NCBI GenBank assembly: GCA_002269645.1
Contig: NIVC01001523.1
Coordinates: forward strand, 62,001 to 126,000
Direction of reading: 5' to 3'
DNA length: 64,000 bases
Origin: Macrostomum lignano
Taxonomy: Eukaryota
Shown here: piece by piece, positions 167-63,826 of the stretch
How the letters are laid out: each line of letters begins with the position of its first letter
Position numbering within the stretch: position 1 is the stretch's first letter
Notes under the pieces: model-generated
Database searches by the model: none
What the model was told of the DNA's origin: nothing
Seen by the model: only the letters and a program-made list of their open reading frames with translations
Program-made: the position numbers and the translations under genes

Positions 167-817
167 AGCCTCTTGGATGACTACCTAATTAAGAATGCTC
201 CCAACTCGGAGTCGAAGGTTTTCTACTTCAAGATGAAGGGCGATTATTTCCGCTACCTAGCCGAGGTGGCCACCGGCGATGAGCGCAAGAACGTTGTCGA
301 CAGCTCCGAGGGCGCCTACAAGTCCGCCACTGACCACGCCGAAACTGAGCTGGCCACCACCCATCCCATCCGCCTTGGCCTGGCCCTCAATTATTCAGTG
401 TTCTTCTACGAGATCAAGAACGACCCGGAGCGGGCTTGCCAACTGGCCAAGAAGGTGGGCGATTTGTTTATTTCACGATGGCTTGCTGTAAATTTTACTG
501 GCCTTTTAAGCACTTGGATGATTTTAAAGTTCTCGTCGCACTTTTTTTATACAGGCCTTCGACAATGCGATTGCGGATCTCGACGATCTGGCCGAAGAGT
601 CCTACAAGGATTCCACTCTGATAATGCAGTTGCTGAGGGACAATCTGACTGTAAGTATATTAGCAAATTTATTAAATTCTGTCCAATAGATCAATTTCTT
701 TTCATTTAATAAAATTTATTACACTTTTCTGATTAATTTTTTCTCCAAACCCCTTCAAATTTGCAGCTCTGGACCTCCGAGCAGGGCGGCGACGATGGCG
801 AACAGCAGGACAACTGA
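167..817 (+). CDS. 14-3-3: 14-3-3 protein, 3' half (cassette A); 5' exons lie upstream of the window
   Basis: Exons 167-454 (after ttttag; SLLDDYLIK...[12 protein letters not shown]...[15 protein letters not shown]...LAKK), 555-650 (AFDNAIADL...[17 protein letters not shown]) and 767-817 ([16 protein letters not shown]). All introns are GT-AG phase 0. Diagnostic 14-3-3 motifs are intact. Confidence 0.95.
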
Positions 818-2630: not shown

Positions 2631-6403
<3,773 letters not shown>

Positions 6404-13084: not shown

Positions 13085-16000
13085 TCCCTACTCTCTCCTC
13101 TCCCCACTCTATCCTCTCCCTACTCTCTCCTCTCCCTACTCTCTCCTCTCCCTACTCTCTCCTCTCCCTACTCTCCTCTCCCTACTCTCCTCTCCCTACT
13201 CTCCTCTCCCTACTCTCCTCTCCCTACTCTCCTCTCCCTATACTTCTCTCCCTTCTCTCTCCTCTCCCTAATCTCATCTCCCTATTCTCATCTCCCTACT
13301 CTCATCTCCCTACTCTCCTCTCCCTACTCTCCTCTCCCTACTCTCCTCACCCTATTCTCCTCTCCATACTCTCTACTCTCTAGTAAGCATCAGCATCAGC
13401 CTATCAGAAAAATTGATATCTGAATTTTCTTGAAACTTGAAACTAAAGCTCACCAATCTCAGATGAGGAATTTGCACTTTGTTCGTTGGTTACGCAAGAT
13501 TGTCATTAATATTTACTATTTGTCAGCTACATTTGCACTCATGTAATACACTGCACACCCTGAAGTTACCTGCTAGTGGCGTGCCAATGAAAGCGGACAG
13601 GCCCTGGCATAAAATGATAAACCCGAACGCTTCTGACAAGTTGTCAATGCCGACCAGTTCAATGCCGATGATTGATCGAAGGGCAACGAAAATGGCTGAA
13701 ATTGGCAGCATATACTCATGGCATATTGACAGGCCTATCGTAGGATTGTAGCAAATTCTCAAGACCGTAGAGAATGATTGGTACGAGAGTGTCTTAGGAA
13801 GAATAGAACAGCGAGGATAGAACAAAGACCAAAATGAATTGAGGACAAAGTTAAAACCAAGAATAGTTAGAGGATACAAAGACCAGGAAGAGTTAGGTGG
13901 CACATAGACCAGGAAAAGAACGGAGGAAACAAAGACCAGGAAAAGAACGGAGGAAACAAAGACCAGGAAAAGAACGGAGGAAACAAAGACCAGGAAAAGA
14001 ACGGAGGAAAAAAAAGACCAGGAAAAGAACGGAGGAAACAAAGACCAGGAACAGAACGGAGGAAACAAAGACCAGGAAAAGAACGGAGGAAACAAAGACC
14101 AGGAAAAGAACGGAGGAAACAAAGATCAGGAAAAGAACGGAGGAAACAAAGACCAGGAAAAGAACGGAGGAAACAAAGACCAGGAAAAGAACGGAGGAAA
14201 CAAAGACCAGGAAAAGAACGGAGGAAAAAAAGACCAGGAAAAGAACGGAGGAAAAAAAGACCAGGAAAAGAACGGAGGAAACAAAGACCAGGAAAAGAAC
14301 GGAGGAAACAAAGACCAGGAAAAGAACGGAGGAAACAAAGACCAGGAAAAGAACGGAGGAAACAAAGACCAGGAAAAGAACGGAGGAAACAAAGACCAGG
14401 AAAAGAACGGAGGAAAAAAAAGACCAGGAAAAGAACGGAGGAAAAAAAGACCAGGAAAAGAACGGAGGAAACAAAGACCAGGAAAAGAACGGAGGAAAAA
14501 AAGACCAGGAAAAGAACGGAGGAAACAAAGACCAGGAAAAGAACGGAGGAAACAAAGACCAGGAAAAGAACGGAGGAAACAAAGACCAGGAAAAGAACGG
14601 AGGAAACAAAGACCAGGAAAAGAACGGAGGAAACAAAGACTAGGAAGAGAACGGAGGACACAAGGATCCGAAAGTGCTAGGGGACACAAAGACCCAGCAA
14701 GTGTTAGAAAACGCAAAGACCCAGCAAGTGTTAGAAAACACAAAGACAAGGAAGAGAGCGCTGGACACAAAACTAATCAATAAATTAAAAACGCAGAAAA
14801 AACAGGTGAGAATTTCCAATTGTCTGGTCGCCCCCTCAGACGCACCGATGCAGCTCCCAAACACCACACACGCCATCACCAGCAGAGCGAAGCTCCGATA
14901 CAGAACAAAAAATCCAGTAGCGATTCCACCAATAGTCAACGAGAAGCTGTTAATCAACAGACTGTCGGCCCAAGGTCGATCAGCCACCCAGCCAACAAGA
15001 AGGCGAGACACGAGGTTCACCCAGCCGGTGACGGAGATCAAGTCCTGCGGCGCCGAGTCTCTCAGCGACAGAGACTTAGCGTACACGGGTATGTAGGTGA
15101 ACGGAATGTAGAATCCTGTGGGATGCGGTAACGAACGAATGCAATAATTTTAAGAATTGAGTAGCAATCTGAAATTCATTTAGCATATCGCAAAGTACTA
15201 TCTGAAGCTAGGAATAGGAGTTTCTCGGAAGCCTCACCGGCCATGCAGAGGAAGCAGGCTGCTCCATAGATGGCCAAAGCTGGATTTCCTCGCAGCAGCC
15301 GGAGCAGTTTCAAAGCCTCCCGGCTCAGTCGTCGAAGTCGAGCTTTCAAGCTGTCATTCTCATCGTCGGCTGTTGAAGCCTGCGGCATCTCCTGCGAGGC
15401 CTCCAGTCGCAGAATTTCATCTCGAAGTACGTCTAGGTTAGTTGTAGAAGCGGCCGCCGCAGCCAACTGCCAGTCACTGCCACCGACTGAACGAAATTTC
15501 GGTCGAGAGATGTCGATCCGGTGTAGTCGACGTTGGCGATGCTGCTGAACGTTCGATGCACTACTCTGGGCGAGGCCTGTAAGGCTGCTGCGATTTGAGT
15601 AAGTATTTTATGCGATGTTTAAATTCTGAGAGGTGATTCGTGAGGTTCTCTACGTTGCTTTGCACGAAACTTAAAACCCTCCAGAGTGCTCATCTGGAAG
15701 TGATTCATGAGGTTCTCTACGTTGCTTCGCACGAAACCTAAAACCCCCCAGAGTGCTCATCTGGAAGTGATTCATGAGGTTCTCTACGTTGCTTCGCACG
15801 AAACCTAAAACCCCCCAGAGTGCTCATCTGGAAGTGATTCATGAGGTTCTCTACGTTGCTTCGCACGAAACCTAAAACCCCCCAGAGTGCTCATCTGGAA
15901 GTGATTCATGAGGTTCTCTACGTCGCTTTCCGCGAAACCTAAAACCCTCCAGAGTGCTCTGCATGATCTATTAGGCTCTCTACTGTTTTTTATCATGTCT

Positions 16001-18644
16001 GAAGCATAATTCCTAAGTGTTTTGAGCGATAATAGCACCTCTAAGTATTCTATGTGTCGATGTCAGTCTTCTCTTGAAGTTTCTAAACAAGTTCAGTGGT
16101 TGCTTTATCAAGCTAGGACGGCAATATTAAATGATCGGAACTAGCCATGAATAGCTAGAACAACCATACCTCGCTGCATCAGCCTGTTGCTGCTTCTGCT
16201 GCTGATTCTTTGTAGCCGGTGGCTGCTTCTGCGGCTGCGTATGAAGATTCAACAACAGCATTGGCTGCGAGCCAGTCGTGTCGCCGCCACCGGCGCCATG
16301 GACTGTCGGTAGGCGAAATCGATGCTGATGCTTGGCAGATGTTGACGTTGAAGAAATGCGCCAATCTGGTAGGCTGAGATAAAAAGCGTCGCTGTTGCTT
16401 CGAGTGTTGGCCTCGGCGTCAGCGGTCGGCTGTAGCTCTACAAGATCAGCTGTGTCCGCTGTGTCATCCGGGTCGGGGTTCACAATGATGGTGGCCTCGA
16501 GCGGTCGGAGAAGTGCCCCGAAGACAACTCCGTTTAGTGCGATGCCTGTATCATCGGATAAGGAGAAAAACTTATGGTAGTAGCAAGCATTAAATGTTCG
16601 GCATAGTTAAACTTGATCTGAGGCTCCCGAAGTCCTGGCTTTCTGTGATTTGAGGCTCCTGAAGTGCTGTTACCTGTGACCTGAGGCTCCCAAAGTGCTG
16701 ACAACTGTGATCTGAGGCTCCCGATGTGCTAACTAGCTGTGATCTGAGGCTCCCGAAGTGCATTGTGTAAGTATAGCTTTATCAGTGATTTGAGGACTTA
16801 AAAGCACATGGTACAATTTATTTTGTATTAAGCGGCTCTTGAAGTGCCTGACTATCTATCTGAGATTTTTATCTCCCTAATACTTAATTATGGTATTAGC
16901 AAGCATTCAGTGTTCGGCTCTCTCAGTTTTCAACACGTTTTACAACCCCATGAGGCCCTGTGGCATAGTTTAACTTGATCTGAGGGTCTCAAAGAGCTGA
17001 CTGACTGTGATCTGAGGCTCCCGATGTGCTGGCTTTCTGTGATTTGAGGCTCCCGAATTGCTGACTAACTGTGATCTGAGGCTCCCGAAGTGCATTGTGT
17101 AAATAGTTTTATCAGTGATTCGAGGCCTTAGAATCACATGGTACAATTTAATTTGCAATATGGGGCTCCCGAAGTGCCTGACTATCTATCTGTGATTTGT
17201 ATCTACCTATACCTAAACTTGCCATAGCTCAACAAATGACCGTCTCACCTGCCACAATAAGTGTGGCGCCTCTCCAGGTGAAAGTGTCAATGAGGAATTC
17301 TGCCAGGTAGGCGAAGACAAAAGCTCCGACTCCCGAGCCGCACACCGCAATGCCGGTTGCCAAGGCGCGGCGCTTGTCAAAATACTGGCCTACCATGACC
17401 AGAGCCGGCAGGTACATCATGCCGAAGCCAAATCCTGCAGCGAGTGTTTCGAAAGCAAGTCCGAGAGTTCATTTGAGGTCAGTGTGCAAATATCAAATCT
17501 GAATACAAATCAAATCATAATCGTCATAATATTTCAATTATAATCCCCAATGACCCAGCTGAGTCTCACCGCCCAGAAAACCGTAGGTGAGGATCAGCAG
17601 AGACACCGAGTTGGCCACCACAGCGCACACGCAGGCGCCGCAGGCGAGCAGGCCACCGAACATGGACACTTTGCGGCAGCCGAATCTGTCGCAGAGGAAA
17701 CTCACGAATGGGCCTGTCGAGGCGGATGTATGACAAAGATGTTGGTGTCTCGAGTATCCAGATGCAGTTCAGGGTATTCAAGCTGCTGGAACAAACTATT
17801 CAGGTATCCAGGGTAATTATCCAGGTATCCAGGGTAATTATTCAGGTATCTCTCGTAATTATTTAGGTATCCCGAGTAATTATTCAGGTATCATGGGTAA
17901 TTATTCAGGTATCCAGGGTAATTATTCAGGTATCGAGGGTAATTATTCAGTTATCGAGGGTAATTTTTCAGGTATCCAGGGTTTAATTATTCGTGCATCT
18001 AGAGTAGCTATCCAGGCATCCAGGGTTTAATTATTTATGCATCTAGAGTAGCTATCCAGGTATCCAGGGTAATTATTCAGGTATCCAGGGTAATCATTCA
18101 GGTATCCAGGGTAAAGTTTCAGGTATCCACGGTAATTATTCAGGTATCTAGGGTAATTATTCAGGTATCCAGGGTAATTATTCAGGTATCCAGGGTAATT
18201 ATCCAGGTATCCAGGGTAATTAATTATTCAGGTATTCAGGATAATTATTTAGATATCTTGGGTAATTATTCAGGTATCTAGGGTAATTATCCAGGTATCC
18301 ATTATTTAGGTATATAGCGTAATTTTTCGGGTATCCAAGGTAATTATTCAGGTATCCACGGTACTATTCAAGTGCCAAGATACTATTCAGACACTACACA
18401 GGTACAGCTAATAAAAGTACATCCACTGACCAATAAACATGTACATCCCATTGTACACGCTACCAATCCAAGCCGTCTTAGCCTTGGACTCTTGAAAGTA
18501 CTCCAAGAACTCGTTGTAGAACAGGCCAAATGAAAAGCTGATGCCGTCAAGAATGACGCCAACCATGAAGGCTGAAAATGTCACCACCCAGCCGTAGCCG
18601 CCATCGAGTGGGATTCGAACCACGGCCTCACCTGTAGACTGCAT
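12062..18644 (-). CDS. Monocarboxylate transporter family (SLC16/MCT, MFS) protein, 8 exons
   Basis: Exons (minus strand): 18644-18431 ([10 protein letters not shown]), 17713-17570 ([16 protein letters not shown]), 17434-17249 ([18 protein letters not shown]...WRGA), 16545-16170 ([15 protein letters not shown] plus loop), about 15577-15238 (5' boundary uncertain), 15115-14846 ([10 protein letters not shown]...[11 protein letters not shown]), 13695-13570 and 12222-12062 (GFLADITG...FYFAG...*). MCT-signature motifs, GT-AG boundaries. The start Met and the exon 4/5 junction are uncertain. Confidence 0.92.
12350..13380. repeat. Second array of the CTCTCCCTACT family (MCT last intron)
   Basis: Visible; same core as 7180-11690. 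Confidence 0.95.
13900..14660. repeat. 27-bp minisatellite AGACCAGGAAAAGAACGGAGGAAACAA
   Basis: Period 27 measured (13921, 13948, 13975). Confidence 0.95.
15620..15960. repeat. 67-bp tandem repeat, about 5 copies
   Basis: GAGTGCTC recurs at 15684, 15751, 15818, 15885 and 15952. Confidence 0.9.
16585..17200. repeat. Imperfect tandem duplication of about 320 bp, built of TGATCTGAGGCTCCCGA subunits
   Basis: AGCAAGCATT..TGTTCGGC near 16585 and 16899; CCTGACTATCTATCTG near 16848 and 17177. Confidence 0.8.
17790..18390. repeat. 21-bp minisatellite TAATTATTCAGGTATCCAGGG
   Basis: Period 21 at 18121, 18142 and 18163. Confidence 0.9.
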
Positions 18645-29876: not shown

Positions 29877-42710
<12,834 letters not shown>

Positions 42711-42849
42711 GGCCTTTTCGAGCAGAGCTTTCGCGAGTTCGAATAGCGATTGAGGGTTCGAAAATTTGTGGTTGGGAGATGATTGACATGTGTGGCAGTT
42801 GGTGTGGACACCGGTTCAATTTTGCAATGAGTACCTACAGTCAAGGGAA

Positions 42850-43745
42850 TAAGAAAGACAGGTAGATAAGAGAAGCAGACAAGTAGATAAGAGAAGCAGA
42901 CAGGTCGATAAGAGAAGCAGACAGGTAGATAAGAGAAGCAAACAGGTATGATAAGAGAAGCAGACAGGTAGATAAGAGAAGCAAACAGGTATGATAAGAG
43001 AAGCAGACAGGTAGATAAGAGAAGCAGACAGGTAGATAAGAGAAGCAAACAGATAGATAAGAGAAGCAAACAGGTATGATAAGAGAAGCAGACAGGTAGA
43101 TAAGAGAAGCAGACAGGTATGATAAGAGAAGCAGACAGGTAGATAAGAGAATCAGACAGGTAGATAAGAGAAGCAGACAGGTAGATAAGAGAAGCAAACA
43201 GATAGATAAGAGAAGCAAACAGGTAAGATAAGAGAAGCAGACAGGTAGATAAGAGAAGCAGACAGGTATGATAAGAGAAGCAGACAGGTAGATAAGAGAA
43301 GCAGACAGGTAGATAAGAGAAGCAGACATTTATGATAAGAGAAGCAGACAGGTAGATAAGAGAAGCAGACAGGTATGATAAGAGAAGCAAACAGATAGAT
43401 AAGAGAAGCAGACAGGTAAGATAAGAGAAGCAGACAGGTAGATAAGAGAAGCAGACAGGTAGATAAGAGAAGCAGATAGGTAGATAAGAGAAGCAGACAT
43501 TTATGATAAGAGAAGCAGACAGGTATGATAAGAGAAGCAAACAGATAGATAAGAGAAGCAGACAGGTAAGATAAGAGAAGCAGACAGGTAGATAAGAGAA
43601 GCAGACAGGTATGATAAGAGAAGCAAACAGGTAGATAAGAGAAGCAGATAGGTAGATAAGAGAAGCAGACATTTATGATAAGAGAAGCAGACAGGTAAAT
43701 AAGAGAAGCAGACAGGTAGATGAGAGAAGCAGACAGGTAGATAAG
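42850..43745. repeat. 21-bp minisatellite GATAAGAGAAGCAGACAGGTA
   Basis: Visible. Confidence 0.95.
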
Positions 43746-45385: not shown

Positions 45386-46049
45386 AGTACGCCCTATTTA
45401 TTGCCTTCTGCTACTTACTTGCAGTTGATTGGCTGGAGAAAACCTCTCCCCCACTTTAGTGACGAAAAGTTTATGCACACTGTAAATTCTGCTTATTATG
45501 GTAGAAAAGTTGAATGCACGTTAAGGCCATCAAGGAGGGTTACATGTACAAAATATCATATTGCTTTAATTACATTTTATTGCTCTGGGTCATTATCATT
45601 TTAACTAACATTGCTGTGCTCAGAAATCGGCAATCAACAATTCAAGTAATGCTTGTTAAGCAAACAGTAAGGACTGCGTAGTTGGTGCAGTCACTATGAG
45701 TTATTATCGCTATTTTCCTAAAAATGGGATCAAGTGCAAACAGTTGCAATTAAATAGCGCTGTGAATAATGATACTGCTTGCTCATAGTCAGCTCAATTT
45801 TGCTGGGTTAATTGTATTATATGTAAAGCGATCCATTTGAGCCATTTGAAATTTAACTGATTTGATCAGTTAATCAGGAAATTTGACACAATTATTAAAA
45901 ATATTTTGAGTCGGTAGTGAGGGTTCATGAATTGTTCAGTTTTAACTGCTTAAAGGTCCAATTGACTTAAAAGATCCATTGAGTCATGGGACTAAGAGAA
46001 ACATTGACTCAGGAATCCATTGGGCTCACGGACATGCACATTGACTCGG

Positions 46050-47235
46050 ACTCATTTAATCAGGGACATATTCACTCAGGGACACATTCACTCAGGGACA
46101 CATTCACTCAGGGACATATTCCCTTAGGGACACATTCACTCAGGGACACATTCACTCACGGACACATTCACTCAGGGACATATTCACTCAGGGACACATT
46201 CACTCAGGGACATATTCACTCAGGGACATATTCACTCAGGGACATATTCACTCAGGGACATATTCACTCAGGGACATATTCACTCAGGGACATATTCACT
46301 CAGGGACATATTCACTCAGGGACACATTCACTCAGGGACATATTCACTCAGGGACATATTCACTCAGGGACACATTCACTCAGGGACATATTCACTCAGG
46401 GACATATTCACTCAGGGACATATTCACTCAGGGACATATTCACTCAGGGACATATTCACTCAGGGACATATTCACTCAGGGACATATTCACTCAGGGACA
46501 TATTCACTCAGGGACACATTCACTCAGGGGCATATTCACTCAGGGACATATTCACTCAGGGACATATTCACTCAGGGACATATTCACTCAGGGACATATT
46601 CACTCAGGGGCATATTCACTCAGGGACATATTCACTCAGGGACACATTCACTCAGGGACATATTCACTCAGGGACATATTCACTCAGGGACACATTCACT
46701 CAGGGACATATTCACTCAGGGACATATTCACTCAGGGACATATTCACTCAGGGACATATTCACTCAGGGACATATTCACTCAGGGACATATTCACTCAGG
46801 GACATATTCACTCAGGGACATATTCACTCAGGGACACATTCACTCAGGGACATATTCACTCAGGGACATATTCACTCAGGGACATATTCACTCAGGGACA
46901 TATTCACTCAGGGACATATTCACTCAGGGACATATTCACTCAGGGACATATTCACTCAGGGACACATTCACTCAGGGACATATTCACTCAGGGACATATT
47001 CACTCAGGGACATATTCACTCAGGGACATATTCACTCAGGGACATATTCACTCAGGGACACATTCACTCAGGGACACATTCACTCAGGGACATATTCACT
47101 CAGGGACATATTCACTCAGGGACATATTCACTCAGGGACACATTCACTCAGGGACATATTCACTCAGGGACATATTCACTCAGGGACATATTCACTCAGG
47201 GACACATTCACTCAGGGACATATTCACTCAGGGAC
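46050..47235. repeat. 16-bp minisatellite CACTCAGGGACATATT
   Basis: Period 16 at 46441, 46457 and 46473; abuts the stop of the sirtuin-like ORF. Confidence 0.96.
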
Positions 47236-47248
47236 CCATTGGCTCAAT

Positions 47249-48373
47249 TCAGTCGATTCTCTTGGAGCGCCAACTCGTCTCTCCCGGCGCCACCGTGAGC
47301 GCCAGCCAAAACTCGCCGCGCCAGCCGTCAGCCGCCAGGCTGCACTCGAACGCTGGCGGCCTCCAGCCGTCGCCACGCCGCAGCGGCCGGAACAGCAGCC
47401 GCAAAGTCAGCGACATCGCCGACGCCGGTCTGAGCGGCCGGAGCTGCACGCAGCTCGCGTTCAACGGCACGTCGAATTCGAACGGCGGTCGTCGCCGCCA
47501 TTCTGCGTCGCTGCCGCCGCCGTAGCCAAGCCCGACTGCCGCCAGCATCGTGGTGATGAAGTCCTCGTCGGGGTCCTTCAGCAGCACAGACACCCGATCC
47601 GCGGTGGCACGAACGCACAGCCGACAGTGGACGATCCATCGAAGCGACTTTGGCGACTGCAGCGGAGCCAGCAGGCGGATCAGGAGCTTGGCTGGCGACG
47701 CGGCCACTCGCTCGTCTGCCTCGTCGTCCAGCGGGGATCGCGAAAGTCCGCAGACCACGAGACGGCGCCAACATTGGCGGCGCTGACGGCGCTCAGATCG
47801 GCGCCAATCGGCAACTCGGTAGTCGCGTCGAACAGTTCCAAGCAGCAGCAGCAGGTCCGCCGACTCGATTGTCGACGCAATGACGTCATCGTTCTTGATG
47901 ACGTCATTGCTACGAAGAGGCGCGGAGAGAGCTCCTCCGCAGGCGGGGCACAACCTGCCCGACGAATCGCCGTCGCTGTCAAAGTCCCAGTGAACTACGG
48001 TGCTTCGCCTGCGGCAGGCGTCGCTGCCTCGAAGGCGACATCGTCGAAAGTCCCGACTGCCGGCGGTCTGCAGCAGTTTGGCCGGCGGAAAACCGGCGCG
48101 ACGCAACCGGCCGTCCGAGGTGTCGACGATCGCGGCACTGACGAGGCCGGCGGCGGCCAGAGCAGCCAGAGCGAGGTGCCCGACTCCAGGCTCGTCGACG
48201 CCGAGGTCCGACTGGTTGTCAATGCCGCTGCCAACGATGGCAAGGACGCGGCCGTCAGGTGCCGACTTGGCCATCCAGGTGCCGATCTCAGCCGCCTGCC
48301 TGTCGGTTGTTGCTTCAGGAGCTTCTGACAGCGGCTGCAGAAATTTGTGATTGCCTTGGCGACGTCGGGGCAT
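47249..48373 (-). CDS. SIRT6-like (class IV sirtuin fold) protein with degenerate active site and a YEATS-like C-terminal region; 374 aa from the first ATG
   Basis: The ORF aligns by eye colinearly with SIRT6: VLAIVGSGID (~TGAGIS), GHLALAAL (~THMALVQL), IVDTSDGRLRRAGFPPAKLLQTAGS (~[25 protein letters not shown]), four Cys (RRC..AC..GRLCPAC), ADLLLLLGT (~ADLSITLGTS), RLVVCGL...DDEADERV (~RLVIVNL...DRHADLRI). GC-rich and CpG-rich like the other exons. Acceptor tctcag lies 2 nt before the ATG; a candidate upstream donor (gtaagt) is at 49426-49421. Confidence 0.82.
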   Translation of the reverse strand: MPRRRQGNHKFLQPLSEAPEATTDRQAAEIGTWMAKSAPDGRVLAIVGSGIDNQSDLGVDEPGVGHLALAALAAAGLVSAAIVDTSDGRLRRAGFPPAKLLQTAGSRDFRRCRLRGSDACRRRSTVVHWDFDSDGDSSGRLCPACGGALSAPLRSNDVIKNDDVIASTIESADLLLLLGTVRRDYRVADWRRSERRQRRQCWRRLVVCGLSRSPLDDEADERVAASPAKLLIRLLAPLQSPKSLRWIVHCRLCVRATADRVSVLLKDPDEDFITTMLAAVGLGYGGGSDAEWRRRPPFEFDVPLNASCVQLRPLRPASAMSLTLRLLFRPLRRGDGWRPPAFECSLAADGWRGEFWLALTVAPGETSWRSKRID

Positions 48374-48404
48374 TTCTGAGAATAGTGTTGAGCAATATGA
48401 CAAC

Positions 48405-49360
48405 TCAGAAACTCAGCAACTCAGTAATTCAACAACTCAGCAGCTCAGTAACTCTGCAACTCATCAACTCTGCAACTCATCAACTCAGCAACTCAGCAAC
48501 TCATCAACTCAGCAACTCATCAACTCAGCAACTCAGCAACTCATCAACTCAGCAACTCATCAACTCTGCAACTCATCAACTCAGCAACTCAGCAACTCAT
48601 CAACTTAACAAGTCATCAACTCATCAACTCTGCAACTCATCAACTCAGCAACTCAGCAACTCATCAACTCAGCAACTCATCAACTCATCAACTCAGCAAC
48701 TCAGCAACTCATCAACTCAGCAACTCAGCAACTCATCAACTCAGCAACTCAGCAACTCATCAACTTAACAAGTCATCAACTCATCAACTCTGCAACTCAT
48801 CAACTCAGCAACTCATCAACTCAGCAACTCAGCAACTCAGTAACTCAGCAACTCAGTAACTCAGTAACTCAGCAACTCAGCAACTCATCAACTCAGCAAC
48901 CCAGCAACTCAGCAACTCTGCAACTCATCAACTCAGCAACTCATCAACTCATCAACTCAGCAACTCAGCAACTCATCAACTCAGCAACTCATCAACTCAG
49001 CAACTCAGCAACTCAGCAACTCAGTAACTCAGTAACTCAGTAACTCAGCAACTCAGCAACTCAGCAACTCAGTAACTCAGCAACTCAGTAACTCAGCAAC
49101 TCAGCAACTCAGTAACTCAGCAACTCAGTAACTCAGCAACTCAGTAACTCAGCAAATCAGCAACTCAGCAACTCAGCAACTCAGCAACTCAGTAACTCAG
49201 TAACTCAGTAACTCAGTAACTCAGCAACTCAGCAACTCAGCAACTCAGCAACTCAGCAACTCAGCAACTCAGTAACTCAGTAACTCAGTAACTCAGCAAC
49301 TCAGCAACTCAGCAACTCAGCAACTCAGTAACTCAGTAACTCAGTAACTCAGAATCTCAT
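48405..49360. repeat. 8-bp repeat CAACTCAG/CAACTCAT/TAACTCAG
   Basis: Visible; probably intronic to the sirtuin-like gene. Confidence 0.95.
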
Positions 49361-49899
49361 CAACATTGGGAAATGACAACTTAGCAACTAAAAGATAAGC
49401 AAATAGTATTTTCAGAAAGAACTTACCGAATTCGCAGTCAGATTCCAATGTTTATTCGAAGAACGAGTTTCAACGCTCGAAGAAGTCGCGCAGTTGCTGC
49501 ATAGCAAGACAAAGTCGCTAAGACGCTTTGCGCGGATGCGGCTTCTTCATATATGGTAAAAAAAATTCTTCTCGTTTTACTGTTCTCAGCCGGCTTCATA
49601 AATAATTAATACCAAAAATAACTTGACAACCTAAGATGGGGGCAATTCTGCTGAGTGGAACCGTGGCAACAATGAATGAATTTTTCATAGCTTTTTGGCG
49701 AAATTAGGTTGCAAGTACGATGCGGTGTGTTAAGACATGTTTTTTATTGTTCTCTAGTGCTTAGGTTGACCGGATCTGCTGAGCTTCGTCACTAATTTTT
49801 ACATGATTCTCATAGGTGATTTTAGGATTTTTCGATCACTTTACGAGCGTATGATTCGGGAGAGACGTCATGATTTTTCTCTGCTTTCACTGCTCGTCA

Positions 49900-54839: not shown

Positions 54840-56171
54840 TCAGTCGTACAAGGAGTCGTGCGACTTGGCCAGCTTCTGTCCGTGCCCTTCAATGTGCTGC
54901 AACGATCCACAACCCGTGGCCGCGTCTCCGCTGCCGCCGGCGCTGGTCCCGTCGCCACCATTGTTGGCGTACAGGCATTTCAGGTGCACGGTCTCCAAGG
55001 CGTGCGAATCTGCGCCGGAGGTCATATCGGCTGTAGCGTCGGCATTGGCGGCCGCGGCTTCGGCCGCCCGACGGCAAACTCCGCAGACCAGCGGACGGGC
55101 CGCCAGACGGTAGACGTCGCTGCGAAATTTGGCGGAGCTGGCCGAGTATACGAAGAAATTTAACAGAGAATCGGTGACGGACAACACGTTGGTGATGGTG
55201 TCCGGGTGGATCGGCAGCGTGCCCTGCAAGCTTGGAGACACAATCAGCATCGTAGTGGACACGAAGGTTGGAAACTCGAGCACGGAGAACAGGATGGCCA
55301 GGCCGAGGACCATCTGGCTGGCTCTGCGCGAGCTCAGCGTCCGTTTCTGCTGACTGCGCCCGGCATTCTGACGGCAAGAGTGGCCGCACCGTTTCGCTGG
55401 CCGGCTGCGTCGAATCTTCACCCACATGATCACGGTGGGGATCGGGATGAGCACTGTTGGAATCAGCGACTGAAAAGCGTACAGAGCCCACTGGGCGCCT
55501 GACGAGTTCATGAGAGGCCGGATGACGACCAGGTCTGGCAGGTTGGTGCACAGCGCCCCCATGTGGCCGAGGTTGTTCAGGACGGCCAGCAGGAGGGCGA
55601 CGGCGATCACGGCGCAGAACATCCCGGCCAGGCGAGTCCGGCTGAACAGCAAGAAACGACGCGAAGCCAACGGCCGGGCGATGACTTCGCAACGGGCTGA
55701 ACTAATCAACAGTACGTTCCAGTTCCTGATGGACACCAGAGTGTTGATGCCGATGTGTACGCAGGTTGTCACCGTGTAGCTAGGCACAGTGTGCCAGTGC
55801 TCAAAGTCGCTACGAACGATGCCAGTCTCCACTAGCAGGATGCACTGCAGGCAGATCTCGGTGCACGAGATTGACAGCAGGGAGAAGCGGACAGCTCGAT
55901 TGTCGAATTTCTGCTTGGCGAAGATGAACAGCGAGAGCGAATTGGCAACCAGAGCCACGGCGGCGATGGGCAGAATGATGAGGCTGTTGAATTTTTCTGT
56001 CTCCACAAAGCCGTGTCCGTGATCTTTGAGGGTTTTATTGGGCTCGGATTCGTTGCACCAGTCTCTGATGTAGTATAGCATGGCTGCTGGAGCTGGGAAG
56101 CAAGTTGGGTAAGGGTTCAATTCGTTAGGCAATTTGGCTTTAATGCACTTGTCGATTTCAAGAAAAGTCAT
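54840..56171 (-). CDS. Intronless rhodopsin-class (class A) orphan GPCR, peptide-receptor-like, 443 aa
   Basis: ATG-initiated ORF with seven hydrophobic segments: TM1 ALVANSLSL, TM3 RNWNVLLISSARCEVIARPL, TM5 QSLIPTVLIP, TM6 FSVLEFP, TM7 DSLLNFFVY, helix 8 SAKFR. N-terminal sequons NES and NKT. Confidence 0.9.
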   Translation of the reverse strand: MTFLEIDKCIKAKLPNELNPYPTCFPAPAAMLYYIRDWCNESEPNKTLKDHGHGFVETEKFNSLIILPIAAVALVANSLSLFIFAKQKFDNRAVRFSLLSISCTEICLQCILLVETGIVRSDFEHWHTVPSYTVTTCVHIGINTLVSIRNWNVLLISSARCEVIARPLASRRFLLFSRTRLAGMFCAVIAVALLLAVLNNLGHMGALCTNLPDLVVIRPLMNSSGAQWALYAFQSLIPTVLIPIPTVIMWVKIRRSRPAKRCGHSCRQNAGRSQQKRTLSSRRASQMVLGLAILFSVLEFPTFVSTTMLIVSPSLQGTLPIHPDTITNVLSVTDSLLNFFVYSASSAKFRSDVYRLAARPLVCGVCRRAAEAAAANADATADMTSGADSHALETVHLKCLYANNGGDGTSAGGSGDAATGCGSLQHIEGHGQKLAKSHDSLYD

Positions 56172-62799: not shown

Positions 62800-63047
62800 T
62801 TACACCTGACCTAATTGGGCAGATGTGCAACCGACAGCTCAGCCGAAGCCAAACAGCTCAGCCGTACGGCTGTTCTGTCCAAGGACTGGGAGGTCGCCAC
62901 ACACACCCTCAATGCTGGCACCTATTTTGAAGCAATGCTAATTCTAAGTGTCTTTCTCAAGAACACAAATTATTCCAGCGGGATCGGGAATCGAACCCCC
63001 GACCTTCAAGTCGAGAGTCCGACGCTCTAACCACTAAGCTAAAACCC
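62800..63047 (-). mobile_element. tRNA-derived SINE
   Basis: On the minus strand: Pol III A box TAGCTTAGTGG (63041-63031) and B box GGTTCGATTCC (62997-62987), without a pairing acceptor or anticodon stem. These are followed by TGTGTTCTTGAGAAAGACACTT (62967-62946), which resembles a conserved central SINE motif, and an AT-rich tail. The 3' boundary is approximate. Confidence 0.7.
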
Positions 63048-63826
63048 TCTTTACTCTTTGTTATACAATGTAGGTAAATAATGTAATCAACCTTTCCGTT
63101 GTGATCAATAATGCTTATGTGTGCCCATCTGAAAGGCTTCTAGTTTGCATCCCTATATTTTCAGAATAAATATTCCAATAAGCCTAATAATTTTATCAGT
63201 TGGCAACCTTCGCAAACCACCCGTAGTTATTCAGAGAATTTTAGTAATTAAATATAGAATTGAGTTTGATTACGCAATATGGGACTTGCTCGAAGGCCTT
63301 CCCTCAACCTTTACACACCGTTTCCTCTTCAAACCCCCTCTTCAAACCCCTGCGCAGAAGGACAGAGAAAGAGGACAGGGGAGAGAGAGGGTCAGAGAGT
63401 GGAAAGGACTGGAGGGGTGACGGGGCCTAGAACCAAGCCCCCCTTTCAAACCTCACCCCCTCTTCCTGTCCAAAAAGCCCTTGGGACTCCACACACACAG
63501 CACACCCACCACCAATGTGCGCGTACATCTACGCAATATCAATCATTTAGCGATGACATCATTCCCCCCTTAAAGTTGGTATATTGTATAGACTGGACTG
63601 GAGTCCCGTCCTGTACATTCCAACCCCCACAAACCTTAACTCCGTCCGATTCCTTCTTCGTTCGTCTGTAATAAATATAATGGCGAGGTAAAAGCAGAGG
63701 AGAGAGGCCAGTGTATCAACCACTCTCATCCTTAGGAGAATAAAGCCAGAAGAGAACACGGTTCTTACACGGTATAGAAATGTCGCAACATCACACAGAC
63801 TTGGCTAACTGTTCTCCACCGCTCAG

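What the first reader, a model, noticed from the sequence alone, without database searches (positions are those of the whole stretch)
47660..48373. Intact SIRT6-like ORF that has lost its catalytic machinery: candidate pseudo-sirtuin
Seen in sequence: an uninterrupted, GC-rich ORF that follows the SIRT6 fold colinearly from N- to C-terminus. It differs at the catalytic positions. GAGIS reads GSGID (48232-48218). The whole cofactor-binding loop (SIRT6 TASGIPDFRGPHGVW...) is replaced by about 8 residues (NQSDLGVD) with no intron there. SQNVDG reads VDTSDG. The catalytic His of the HG motif reads Ala (TAGS, codon 48064-48062). The four Zn-module Cys and structural motifs (GFP..KL, ADL...LGT, RLV..L) are kept. 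Established: the HG histidine, the QN(I/V)D motif and the FRG loop are required for NAD-dependent deacylation by sirtuins. Inference: this is a folded but enzymatically dead sirtuin under selection, possibly a nucleosome or acyl-lysine binder, a scaffold, or a dominant-negative partner of true SIRT6. The supplied track shows it only as an anonymous ORF hidden under a longer repeat-driven antisense ORF.
Basis: partly seen in the sequence, partly recalled or inferred. Interest (0 to 1): 0.8.

Follow-up and report, generated by a model that had tools for sequence, protein, structure and literature searches.

The report
Catalytically dead sirtuin-like gene
An intact single-exon gene in a repeat-packed animal genome is a very diverged relative of the SIRT6/SIRT7 enzymes that has lost nearly every residue needed to bind NAD and catalyse, so it is probably a non-enzymatic "pseudo-sirtuin", though a recently dead pseudogene is not excluded.

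Summary
The minus-strand ORF 47249-48373 (374 codons) is a true but very remote homologue of class IV sirtuins. The best hit among 1.84 billion proteins has E=1.3e-10 at 30% identity, and a family HMM scores 87 bits in one frame only.

All 50 nearest homologues keep GAGIS, FRG, QNxD, HG, four Cys, G[ST]S and NLQ. The window ORF has GSGIDN, a roughly 30-residue deletion of the cofactor loop, DTSD, AGS, GTV and GLS.

Two corrections:
- The gene runs 411 nt beyond the reported end and includes the C-terminal beta-domain typical of long-form class IV sirtuins.
- Only three Zn cysteines align; the fourth sits five residues downstream.

"Dead" is well supported. "Under selection" is supported only indirectly:
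- There is no stop or frameshift, although near-invariant sites imply about 0.23 substitutions per site. Simulated chance of no stop is 0.5-1%.
- GC3 and codon usage match the host genes.
- Losses lean towards the NAD sites.

Two tests for fold-level constraint were inconclusive. No orthologue, paralogue or expression data could be found, and the species is unidentified.

Best reading is a translated pseudo-sirtuin (about 0.55), against a still-open relic (about 0.3).

The parts
47249..48373 (-). Complete single-exon ORF of the sirtuin-like gene: 374 codons plus a TGA stop. It is colinear with full-length long-form class IV sirtuins, from the N-terminal 'HK' motif to the C-terminal Trp.
48218..48232 (-). 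GSGID, the degenerate form of the GAGIS dinucleotide-binding motif (A to S, S to D; the following T is N).
48194..48217 (-). NQSDLGVD, an 8-residue linker in place of the cofactor-binding loop of about 38 residues (STSAGIPDFRGPxGVW...). This is an in-frame deletion with no intervening DNA.
48110..48127 (-). VDTSDG in place of SQNxDG. The Gln and the invariant Asn are lost; the Asp and Gly are kept.
48062..48064 (-). Ala104 codon at the position of the invariant catalytic His (HGN reads AGS).
47939..48040 (-). Zn-module remnant. C112, C142 and C145 are at the family positions. The second family Cys position is Arg115 (48029-48031), with a Cys at 120 (48014-48016), giving Cx7C...CxxC instead of CxxC...CxxC.
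47741..47860 (-). Retained Rossmann strands ADLLLLLGT and RLVVCGL, with the GTS Ser changed to Val and NLQ changed to GLS. Between them lies an Arg-rich, low-confidence segment (RRDYRVADWRRSERRQRRQCWR).
47252..47659 (-). C-terminal beta-rich domain (residues 239-374), homologous to the uncharacterised C-terminal domain of long-form class IV sirtuins. The family motifs RRRLxV, EPF, LxLxF, xEPxL and Wx read HCRLCV, PPF, LTLRLLF, RPPAF and SW here.
45986..48328 (+). The 780-aa antisense ORF. It is in the same codon register as the gene and runs on into the 16-mer array. It is a by-product of the absence of TTA and CTA codons and the single TCA codon, not a gene.
46060..47235 (.). 16-bp tandem array (73 copies) that begins 13 nt after the stop codon.
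48401..49364 (.). 8-bp tandem array (120 copies) that ends 27 nt upstream of the ATG. The unique 27 nt end in ttctcag|aaATG, which looks like a splice acceptor.

Best explanation
This is a protein-coding, catalytically dead paralogue of a class IV (SIRT6/SIRT7-type, long-form) sirtuin, i.e. a pseudo-sirtuin.

Shown:
- It is homologous over its full length to active class IV sirtuins.
- It has lost the NAD-binding loop, the catalytic His and most other ligand-contacting motifs.
- Its reading frame, start and stop are intact and sit at the family's boundaries.
- Its synonymous-site composition matches host genes.

Inferred:
- The gene arose by duplication, possibly by retroposition, since it is intronless in an intron-rich genome.
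- It lost NAD chemistry and has since evolved fast under weak constraint and GC pressure, while still being translated.

Most likely mode of action (inference only): a non-enzymatic binding protein. It would use what remains of the Rossmann/Zn scaffold and the C-terminal beta-domain to occupy partners of its active ancestor. It is strongly basic (pI 9.6, 13% Arg), which would suit chromatin or nucleic-acid contact. It would act as a competitor or adaptor rather than as a deacylase or an acyl-lysine reader.
For: Homology:
- Exhaustive phmmer, 50 hits, best E=1.3e-10; the ten best were scanned and all are Pfam SIR2 proteins.
- Family HMM 87 bits, one domain, one frame, covering model positions 91-382 of 404.
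- C-terminal domain significant on its own, 0 of 1000 shuffles reaching its score.
- SIRT6 is the best PDB match by sequence and by predicted fold.

Deadness: every one of 50 homologues keeps GAGIS, FRG, QNxD, HG, G[ST]S and NLQ. The ORF has GSGIDN, a deleted loop, DTSD, AGS, GTV and GLS.

Maintenance of the frame:
- Near-invariant positions are kept at only 16 of 27, implying about 0.23 nucleotide substitutions per site if they were free.
- At 0.20-0.26 substitutions per site, simulated neutral drift leaves no in-frame stop in only 1.1-0.5% of runs.
- Under an assumed indel-to-substitution ratio of 0.05, the chance of no frameshift is about 1e-5.
- None of 2000 shuffles is open over 384 codons.

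Coding signature:
- GC3 is 0.74, against 0.75, 0.78 and 0.67 in the window's GPCR, 14-3-3 and P2X exons, while unique DNA overall is 45% GC.
- RSCU correlation with host genes is r=0.77.

Losses lean towards ligand sites. NAD/catalytic near-invariant positions are kept at 4 of 11, others at 12 of 16. Fisher p=0.06, or 0.005 if the deleted loop is counted as lost.
Against: - No orthologue or paralogue exists in about 15 billion predicted proteins or in metagenome contigs, so no conservation or dN/dS evidence is available.
- Divergence looks fairly uniform. Only 27 of 58 columns with at least 80% consensus are kept; the lowest active member keeps 62%.
- The runs test for clustering of retained positions gives p=0.11.
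- Hydrophobic positions are kept at 0.80, against 0.72 +/- 0.07 in neutral simulations that forbid stops; 12% of simulations do as well.
- One Zn cysteine is displaced, and Arg-rich low-confidence stretches are present.
- Pfam SIR2 does not recognise the ORF.
- The confident AlphaFold model depends on the homologues' alignment; the single-sequence model has pLDDT 35.
- Tandem arrays abut both ends, so no promoter or UTR is recognisable.
- There are no expression data.
- The indel ratio used for the frameshift argument is an assumption.
Confidence: 0.55

Rival explanations
1. It is a non-functional relic: a duplicated or retroposed class IV sirtuin copy, or a family member on its way to loss. 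On this view it is no longer under protein-level selection and its frame merely happens still to be open, helped by GC-rich composition.
For: - Conserved structural and catalytic residues are degraded fairly uniformly.
- The replacement pattern cannot be told apart from neutral codon drift of about 0.37 substitutions per site from an active homologue.
- One Zn ligand is lost and Arg/Ala-rich composition drift is evident: GC1 0.69 and GC2 0.56, against 0.54 and 0.46 in the GPCR.
- The ORF is an orphan, with no relatives.
- It is intronless in an intron-rich genome.
- It is embedded between tandem arrays.
- Class IV sirtuin families are known to be lost repeatedly in animal lineages (PMC9486876).
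Against: - There is no stop in 374 codons and no frameshift over 1.1 kb. Simulated P(no stop) is 0.005-0.011 at the divergence implied by near-invariant sites, and frameshift-free survival is far smaller under usual indel rates.
- The start and stop codons still sit at the family's boundaries.
- GC3 has stayed at host-exon level rather than decaying towards the 40-45% GC of surrounding unique DNA.
- A version in which the gene died only very recently, after a long life as a pseudo-sirtuin, cannot be separated from the best explanation with these data.
Confidence: 0.3
2. It is foreign or misplaced DNA: a horizontal transfer, a contaminant or a mis-assembly from a GC-rich protist or fungus. The best hits come from such organisms.
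For: - At 65% GC it is the most GC-rich unique segment of the window.
- The named best hits are Amoebozoa, Preaxostyla, euglenid, haptophyte and fungi rather than animals.
Against: - Identities are only 25-33%, with no taxonomic signal.
- GC3 and codon usage match the window's own genes. The excess GC lies in codon positions 1 and 2.
- The segment is joined on both sides, within 13 and 27 nt, to tandem arrays of the kind that make up 53% of this window.
- A contaminant would be expected to carry an intact enzyme.
Confidence: 0.04
3. It is still an enzyme, binding NAD or another nucleotide in an unconventional way or catalysing a different reaction.
For: The Rossmann glycines G48 and G50, Asp87 of QNxD and G179 are retained.
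Against: - The catalytic His, the invariant Asn, the Ser/Thr of GAGIST, the Ser of GTS and the N and Q of NLQ are all replaced.
- The entire cofactor-binding loop is deleted.
- None of the 50 homologues tolerates any of these changes.
Confidence: 0.03

Closest known systems
Long-form class IV sirtuins with a C-terminal beta-domain (e.g. Balamuthia mandrillaris KAL6073944.1, Paratrimastix pyriformis KAJ4461701.1, Xylaria longipes KAI8951282.1 'sirtuin-7')
   Same: - Colinear over the whole length: N-terminal 'HK' motif, Rossmann strands, PTxTHMAL helix, GxPxxKL, GRxCxxCGG Zn knuckle, ADLxLxLG, KLVIxNL.
- Shares the extra C-terminal domain (RRRLxV, EPF, LxLxF, GHYxEP, LxYxPxxGxW).
- 22-33% identity, E down to 1.3e-10.
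   Different: - All of them keep every catalytic and NAD motif; the window ORF keeps almost none.
- It lacks about 30 residues of the cofactor loop.
- It has the longest terminal branch, 1.17 against a median of 0.41.
Human SIRT6 (PDB 3K35, 3PKI, 8F86 and others) and SIRT7 (9GMK)
   Same: Best solved-structure match by sequence (E=0.013, residues 62-236) and by predicted fold (Foldseek E=5e-13, TM about 0.6 on the target).
   Different: - SIRT6 has GAGIS, FRG, QNVD, HG and CxxC...CxxC and no C-terminal beta-domain.
- The SIRT6-specific Zn-module loop that anchors to the nucleosome has no visible counterpart here. That this loop anchors SIRT6 to the nucleosome is from my own knowledge.
- Human SIRT6 is a multi-exon gene (own knowledge); this ORF is intronless.
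Animal class IV expansions SIR8 and SIR9 (Gold and Sinclair 2022, PMC9486876)
   Same: These are extra class IV paralogues present in early-branching animals and some lophotrochozoans, and lost repeatedly. That gives a plausible source for an extra, decaying or repurposed class IV copy in an animal genome.
   Different: - SIR8 and SIR9 are predicted to be active NAD-binding enzymes.
- Their diagnostic motif and insertion could not be compared, because no reference sequences were in hand.
Pseudoenzymes of other deacylase families (class IIa HDACs with the catalytic Tyr replaced by His)
   Same: A catalytic residue is replaced while the fold is kept for scaffolding or reader roles (PMC12383505, listed, abstract only).
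   Different: - Class IIa HDACs change one residue, are deeply conserved and are demonstrably expressed.
- This ORF has lost a dozen functional positions, is an orphan, and has no expression evidence.
Processed (retro)pseudogenes and retrogenes
   Same: It is intronless, while the neighbouring 14-3-3 and P2X genes are split into exons of about 60-100 codons. It is also fast-evolving.
   Different: - No poly(A) remnant or target-site duplication is visible, because arrays abut both ends.
- There are no disabling mutations.
- The parent gene is unknown.

Membership tests
Sir2/sirtuin superfamily (homology) | Statistically significant sequence similarity to SIR2-domain proteins | tested here: met
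   - 50 hits at E<=1e-3 in 1.84e9 proteins, best 1.3e-10.
- The top 10 hits were scanned and all are Pfam SIR2 proteins.
- Family HMM 87 bits in one frame only.
Sir2/sirtuin superfamily (homology) | Match to Pfam SIR2 (PF02146) at or above the gathering score | tested here: not met
   No Pfam family is reported even at E<=10. NCBIfam CobB scores only 14.9 bits against a cut-off of 320.
Sir2/sirtuin superfamily (homology) | Rossmann fold plus a small Zn-binding module | tested here: inconclusive
   - AlphaFold2 with the homologue alignment gives pLDDT 80.5 and pTM 0.79, and Foldseek ranks SIRT6 best at E=5e-13.
- That model is driven by the active homologues.
- The single-sequence model has pLDDT 35.
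NAD-dependent protein deacylases (active sirtuins) | Catalytic His of the HG motif | tested here: not met
   The ORF has Ala104. All 50 homologues have His.
NAD-dependent protein deacylases (active sirtuins) | GAGxS(T) motif and the cofactor-binding loop (GIPDFRG...W) | tested here: not met
   The motif reads GSGIDN, and the loop is deleted (about 30 residues) and replaced by NQSDLGVD.
NAD-dependent protein deacylases (active sirtuins) | QNxD, G[ST]S and N(L)Q nucleotide-contact motifs | tested here: not met
   They read DTSD, GTV and GLS. Only the Asp, the Gly-Thr and the Leu remain.
NAD-dependent protein deacylases (active sirtuins) | Four Zn-binding cysteines (CxxC...CxxC) | tested here: inconclusive
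   C112, C142 and C145 align. The second position is Arg115, with a Cys five residues later at 120. Whether Zn binds was not testable.
NAD-dependent protein deacylases (active sirtuins) | NAD-dependent deacylase or ADP-ribosyltransferase activity | not testable with these tools
   This needs recombinant protein assays.
Class IV sirtuins (SIRT6/7 type), long form | Closest to SIRT6/SIRT7-type sequences rather than classes I-III | tested here: met
   - The PDB ranking puts SIRT6 (E=0.013) well ahead of Sir2Tm and SIRT3 (E>0.6).
- Foldseek ranks SIRT6 and then SIRT7 first.
- Named hits are annotated sirtuin 6 or 7.
Class IV sirtuins (SIRT6/7 type), long form | C-terminal beta-domain with EPF ... 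GHYxEP ... W motifs | tested here: met
   - Domain-only HMM scores 12.3 bits, against a shuffle maximum of 4.2 (0 of 1000), colinear over model positions 8-128.
- The phmmer alignments reach residue 313.
- The motifs themselves are degenerate.
Class IV sirtuins (SIRT6/7 type), long form | Assignment to SIR6, SIR7, SIR8 or SIR9 | not tested
   - No reference sequences of SIR7-9 were in hand.
- In the NJ tree the ORF joins another long branch (P0047), which is not informative.
Functional pseudoenzyme | Reading frame maintained despite loss of catalytic residues | tested here: met
   - 374 codons, no stop, no frameshift.
- Simulated P(no stop) is 0.005-0.011 at the implied divergence.
Functional pseudoenzyme | Conserved in other species with the same substitutions and dN/dS below 1 | not testable with these tools
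   No relative closer than 33% identity was found in any collection. The source species is unidentified.
Functional pseudoenzyme | Expressed as RNA and protein | not testable with these tools
   No transcript data are available. No matching transcriptome-derived protein exists in the searched collections.
Processed pseudogene | Intronless copy with a poly(A) remnant or target-site duplications, and disabling mutations | tested here: not met
   The copy is intronless, but no poly(A) remnant or duplication is present, tandem arrays start 13 nt after the stop, and there is no disabling mutation.

The most novel reading that the evidence does not exclude
This is a genuine, translated and selected pseudo-sirtuin. 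It would be the first natural eukaryotic class IV sirtuin paralogue described that has shed NAD chemistry altogether: cofactor loop deleted, catalytic His lost. It would be retained as a non-catalytic, basic binding protein that competes with or adapts the partners of active SIRT6/7-type enzymes. The literature search in the held library found no such case.
Probability: 0.4. Interest if true: 0.65.

Novelty: new variant of a known kind. Interest (0 to 1): 0.45.

Why it matters
Sirtuins are studied almost wholly as NAD-dependent enzymes. Whether their non-catalytic, scaffolding functions matter is usually probed with engineered His mutants.

A naturally evolved sirtuin that has discarded the cofactor loop and catalytic residues but is kept as a protein would be a natural experiment on those non-enzymatic roles. 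It would also add sirtuins to the enzyme families with pseudoenzyme members.

It fits the picture of repeated birth and loss of class IV sirtuin paralogues in animals (PMC9486876). It could capture a paralogue either being repurposed or caught just before loss.

As it stands it is a single orphan locus in an unidentified species. It is a lead, not a result.

Tried and rejected
Searches that found nothing or gave a weak result:
- Pfam on the ORF found nothing. NCBIfam gave only a sub-threshold CobB match.
- The word-indexed search of 5.8e9 proteins found no hits.
- The exact-protein look-up of the ORF and of the neighbouring GPCR found neither on record.
- The metagenome contig scan with six peptide patterns produced 358 candidate stretches, none confirmed.
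- Single-sequence AlphaFold2 gave pLDDT 35 and was uninformative.
- Species identification failed. The GPCR ORF has no relatives, and the 14-3-3 exon reaches only 72% identity at best, with no taxonomic resolution.
- tblastn and blastn of the ORF and of 16 sirtuins against the window found no second copy and no active sirtuin exon.
- Pfam found nothing on the C-terminal domain of the ORF or of two homologues.
- Literature searches for natural sirtuin pseudoenzymes found nothing relevant.

Hypotheses tested and rejected:
- Compensated frameshifts. Translating all six frames against the family HMM gave no alternative-frame match.
- The long antisense ORF as a gene. It is codon-aligned and explained by the absence of TTA, CTA and TCA codons.
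- Foreign origin. Codon usage and GC3 are host-like.

Tests for fold-level purifying selection that were inconclusive:
- Hydrophobic-pattern retention against neutral codon simulations: 12% of simulations did at least as well.
- Runs test for clustering of retained consensus residues: p=0.11.

Full report
**What is there**

The minus strand carries an uninterrupted ORF from the first ATG at 48373 to a TGA at 47249-47251, 374 codons.
- It fills almost exactly a 1165-nt unique segment of 65% GC (47236-48400).
- That segment lies between a 16-bp tandem array (46060-47235) and an 8-bp tandem array (48401-49364).

**Genomic setting**

The window is from an intron-bearing eukaryote, most likely an animal.
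- It holds 14-3-3 exons, several P2X-receptor exons, transporter-like exons and a single-exon rhodopsin-type GPCR ORF.
- 53% of it is made of 40 minisatellite arrays.
- The species could not be identified. The GPCR has no relatives in the protein collection, and the 14-3-3 exon reaches only 72% identity. The lineage is therefore poorly sampled and probably fast-evolving.

**Is the sirtuin similarity real?**

Yes, but it is remote.
- Pfam SIR2 does not hit the ORF.
- phmmer against PDB sequences places SIRT6 first, E=0.013, colinear over residues 62-236. Sir2Tm and SIRT3 follow far behind.
- An exhaustive phmmer of 1.84 billion representatives gives 50 proteins at E<=1e-3, best 1.3e-10 at 30% identity.
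- The ten best are all Pfam SIR2 proteins.
- Named hits come from Amoebozoa, Preaxostyla, euglenids, haptophytes, fungi and a nematode, and are annotated Sir2, sirtuin 6 or sirtuin 7.
- An HMM built from those 50 plus human SIRT6 scores 87 bits on the ORF frame as one domain (model positions 91-382 of 404). It scores nothing in the other five frames.

**The gene is longer than reported**

- The alignment is colinear from the N-terminal 'HK' motif, a few residues after the Met, to a conserved Trp six residues before the stop.
- The last 136 residues match the uncharacterised C-terminal beta-domain of long-form class IV sirtuins.
- That domain is significant on its own: 12.3 bits against a maximum of 4.2 in 1000 shuffles.
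- Pfam has no family for this domain.
- The gene is therefore 47249-48373, not 47660-48373.

**Loss of the catalytic machinery**

I checked 26 landmark positions of human SIRT6 against the 50 homologues. All 50 keep the catalytic His, the Asn and Asp of QNxD and three of the four Zn Cys positions (P0011 has Pro at the fourth). The full-length ones nearly all keep GAGxS and an F/Y-R-G loop motif. The window ORF differs as follows.

| Family motif | Window ORF |
|---|---|
| GAGIST | GSGIDN |
| Cofactor-binding loop | about 30 residues deleted in frame; 8 unrelated residues remain |
| QNxD | DTSD |
| HGN | AGS |
| GTS | GTV |
| NLQ | GLS |
| Second Zn Cys | Arg115, with a Cys five residues later |

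The FGExLP segment that staples the acyl-lysine substrate is also unrecognisable. That role of the segment is from my own knowledge of sirtuin structures. Its loss argues against an acyl-lysine reader role. NAD-dependent catalysis is effectively excluded by sequence.

**Gene or relic? Evidence for continued coding**

1. The frame is open and unshifted.
   - None of 2000 shuffles of the segment gives 384 open codons in any frame.
   - Positions that are at least 94% invariant in active homologues are kept at only 16 of 27. If those positions were free, that implies about 0.23 nucleotide substitutions per site.
   - Starting from the ORF and drifting with its own composition, only 1.1% of simulations (d=0.20) to 0.5% (d=0.26) stay free of in-frame stops.
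   - With an assumed indel-to-substitution ratio of 0.05, frameshift-free survival is about 1e-5. The ratio is an assumption.
2. The start and stop lie at the family's own boundaries.
3. Third-position GC is host-like.
   - GC3 is 0.74, as in the host's GPCR (0.75), 14-3-3 (0.78) and P2X (0.67) exons. Surrounding unique DNA is about 45% GC.
   - Relative synonymous codon usage correlates with host genes at r=0.77.
   - The extra GC lies in codon positions 1 and 2. The amino-acid sequence has drifted towards Arg, Ala, Gly and Pro (13% Arg, pI 9.6).
4. Losses lean towards ligand sites. They are kept at 4 of 11, against 12 of 16 for other near-invariant sites: p=0.06, or 0.005 counting the deleted loop. 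I assigned the site classes from memory of sirtuin structures and after seeing the data.

**Evidence against continued coding**

- Divergence is heavy and fairly even. The ORF keeps 27 of 58 columns with at least 80% consensus, against 62% for the lowest active member. Its terminal branch is 1.17 against a median of 0.41.
- Retained positions are not significantly clustered, p=0.11.
- Hydrophobic positions are kept no better than in neutral codon simulations that merely forbid stops: 0.80 against 0.72 +/- 0.07.
- The confident AlphaFold model (pLDDT 80.5; Foldseek SIRT6 E=5e-13) rests on the homologues' alignment. The single-sequence model is poor.
- No orthologue, paralogue or transcript-derived protein exists in any collection searched.
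- Tandem arrays leave only 27 nt upstream and 13 nt downstream. The upstream 27 nt end in a good splice-acceptor-like ttctcag two bases before the ATG. The array upstream could therefore be intronic.

**Verdict**

The sequence evolved for a long time without NAD chemistry while its reading frame was protected. That is what a translated pseudoenzyme under weak, non-catalytic constraint looks like.
- I put this at about 0.55.
- A relic that is still open, or one that died very recently, is at about 0.3.
- Foreign or misassembled DNA is at about 0.04. It is disfavoured by host-like codon usage and by the junctions with host-type arrays.
- A still-active unconventional enzyme is at about 0.03.

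The gene being intronless among intron-rich neighbours suggests a retrocopy origin. No poly(A) remnant or target-site duplication survives to prove it.

**Mechanism (inference only)**

It would be a basic, non-catalytic binding protein. It would use the residual Rossmann/Zn scaffold and the C-terminal domain to occupy partners of its active ancestor.

**Comparison with what is known**

- It works like a pseudoenzyme, and the analogy to class IIa HDACs is loose.
- By homology it belongs to the class IV sirtuins of the long form.
- It fails every defining feature of an active sirtuin that could be tested, and it fails Pfam's own threshold.
- Animal class IV sirtuins include extra families (SIR8, SIR9) that have been lost many times (PMC9486876). 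That gives a natural source for such a copy.
- Three literature searches found no described natural eukaryotic pseudo-sirtuin. The library is not exhaustive.

**Scores**

- Novelty: new variant of a known kind, if functional.
- Interest: moderate, 0.45. It is a clean and unusual lead, but it rests on one orphan locus without expression or comparative data.

Noticed in passing
window 47872-47915: The only two TGACGTCA (CRE-like) octamers in the 64 kb both lie inside the ORF, 18 bp apart. They sit in the arms of a 19-nt inverted repeat that is 89% complementary with a 6-nt spacer. The repeat encodes SNDVIKNDDVIAS, a locally AT-richer patch where the family has DTIINFGExLP. Thirteen of 100 shuffles give at least two octamers anywhere in the window, but their pairing in one palindrome is unexplained.
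   Followed up: partly
window 48374-48400: The 27 unique bases between the 8-mer array and the ATG end in ttctcag|aaATG, which looks like a splice acceptor. The start codon may lie just inside an exon, with the upstream array being intronic.
   Followed up: no
window 1-64000: 53% of the window consists of 40 separate minisatellite arrays with units of 4-146 bp. They fill introns and intergenic space right up to exon and ORF ends. For example, an array starts 59 nt after the GPCR stop and another 13 nt after the sirtuin-like stop.
   Followed up: partly
window 173-460, about 2520-2700 and about 4560-4800 (+): There are three separate 14-3-3 exon copies, suggesting tandem paralogues. The first reaches only 72% identity to anything in the protein collection.
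   Followed up: partly
window 35887-39005 (+): A P2X receptor gene is split into short exons at 35887-36111, about 37650-37880, 38505-38681 and 38685-39005, with introns full of tandem arrays. Pfam P2X_receptor matches the second exon at E=5e-21.
   Followed up: partly
window 54840-56171 (-): A single-exon 443-aa ORF has weak rhodopsin-family GPCR matches (7tm_1 E=1.2e-5, below its gathering score; Srw E=1.3e-5, above its gathering score). It has no relatives in the word-indexed protein search and is an orphan like the sirtuin-like ORF.
   Followed up: partly
window 14748-15149 and 17232-17768 (-): Open frames with GC3 excess look by eye like monocarboxylate/MFS transporter exons (e.g. [33 protein letters not shown]). 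They were not scanned against Pfam.
   Followed up: no
window 42307-42855: This is the second most GC-rich unique segment (62.5% GC, CpG observed/expected 1.21), between two arrays. The ORF list shows no recognisable coding sequence. It may be a CpG island or a diverged exon.
   Followed up: no
window 62978-63048 (-): A tRNA match to Rfam RF00005 scores 29 bits, exactly at the gathering score.
   Followed up: no
homologues P0004, P0009, P0037: Several long-form class IV sirtuins of Amoebozoa carry a C-terminal zf-UBP domain after the beta-domain (Pfam-confirmed for P0004 and P0009; read from the alignment for the unnamed P0037). The beta-domain itself has no Pfam family. Both are family-level features that seem little described.
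   Followed up: partly
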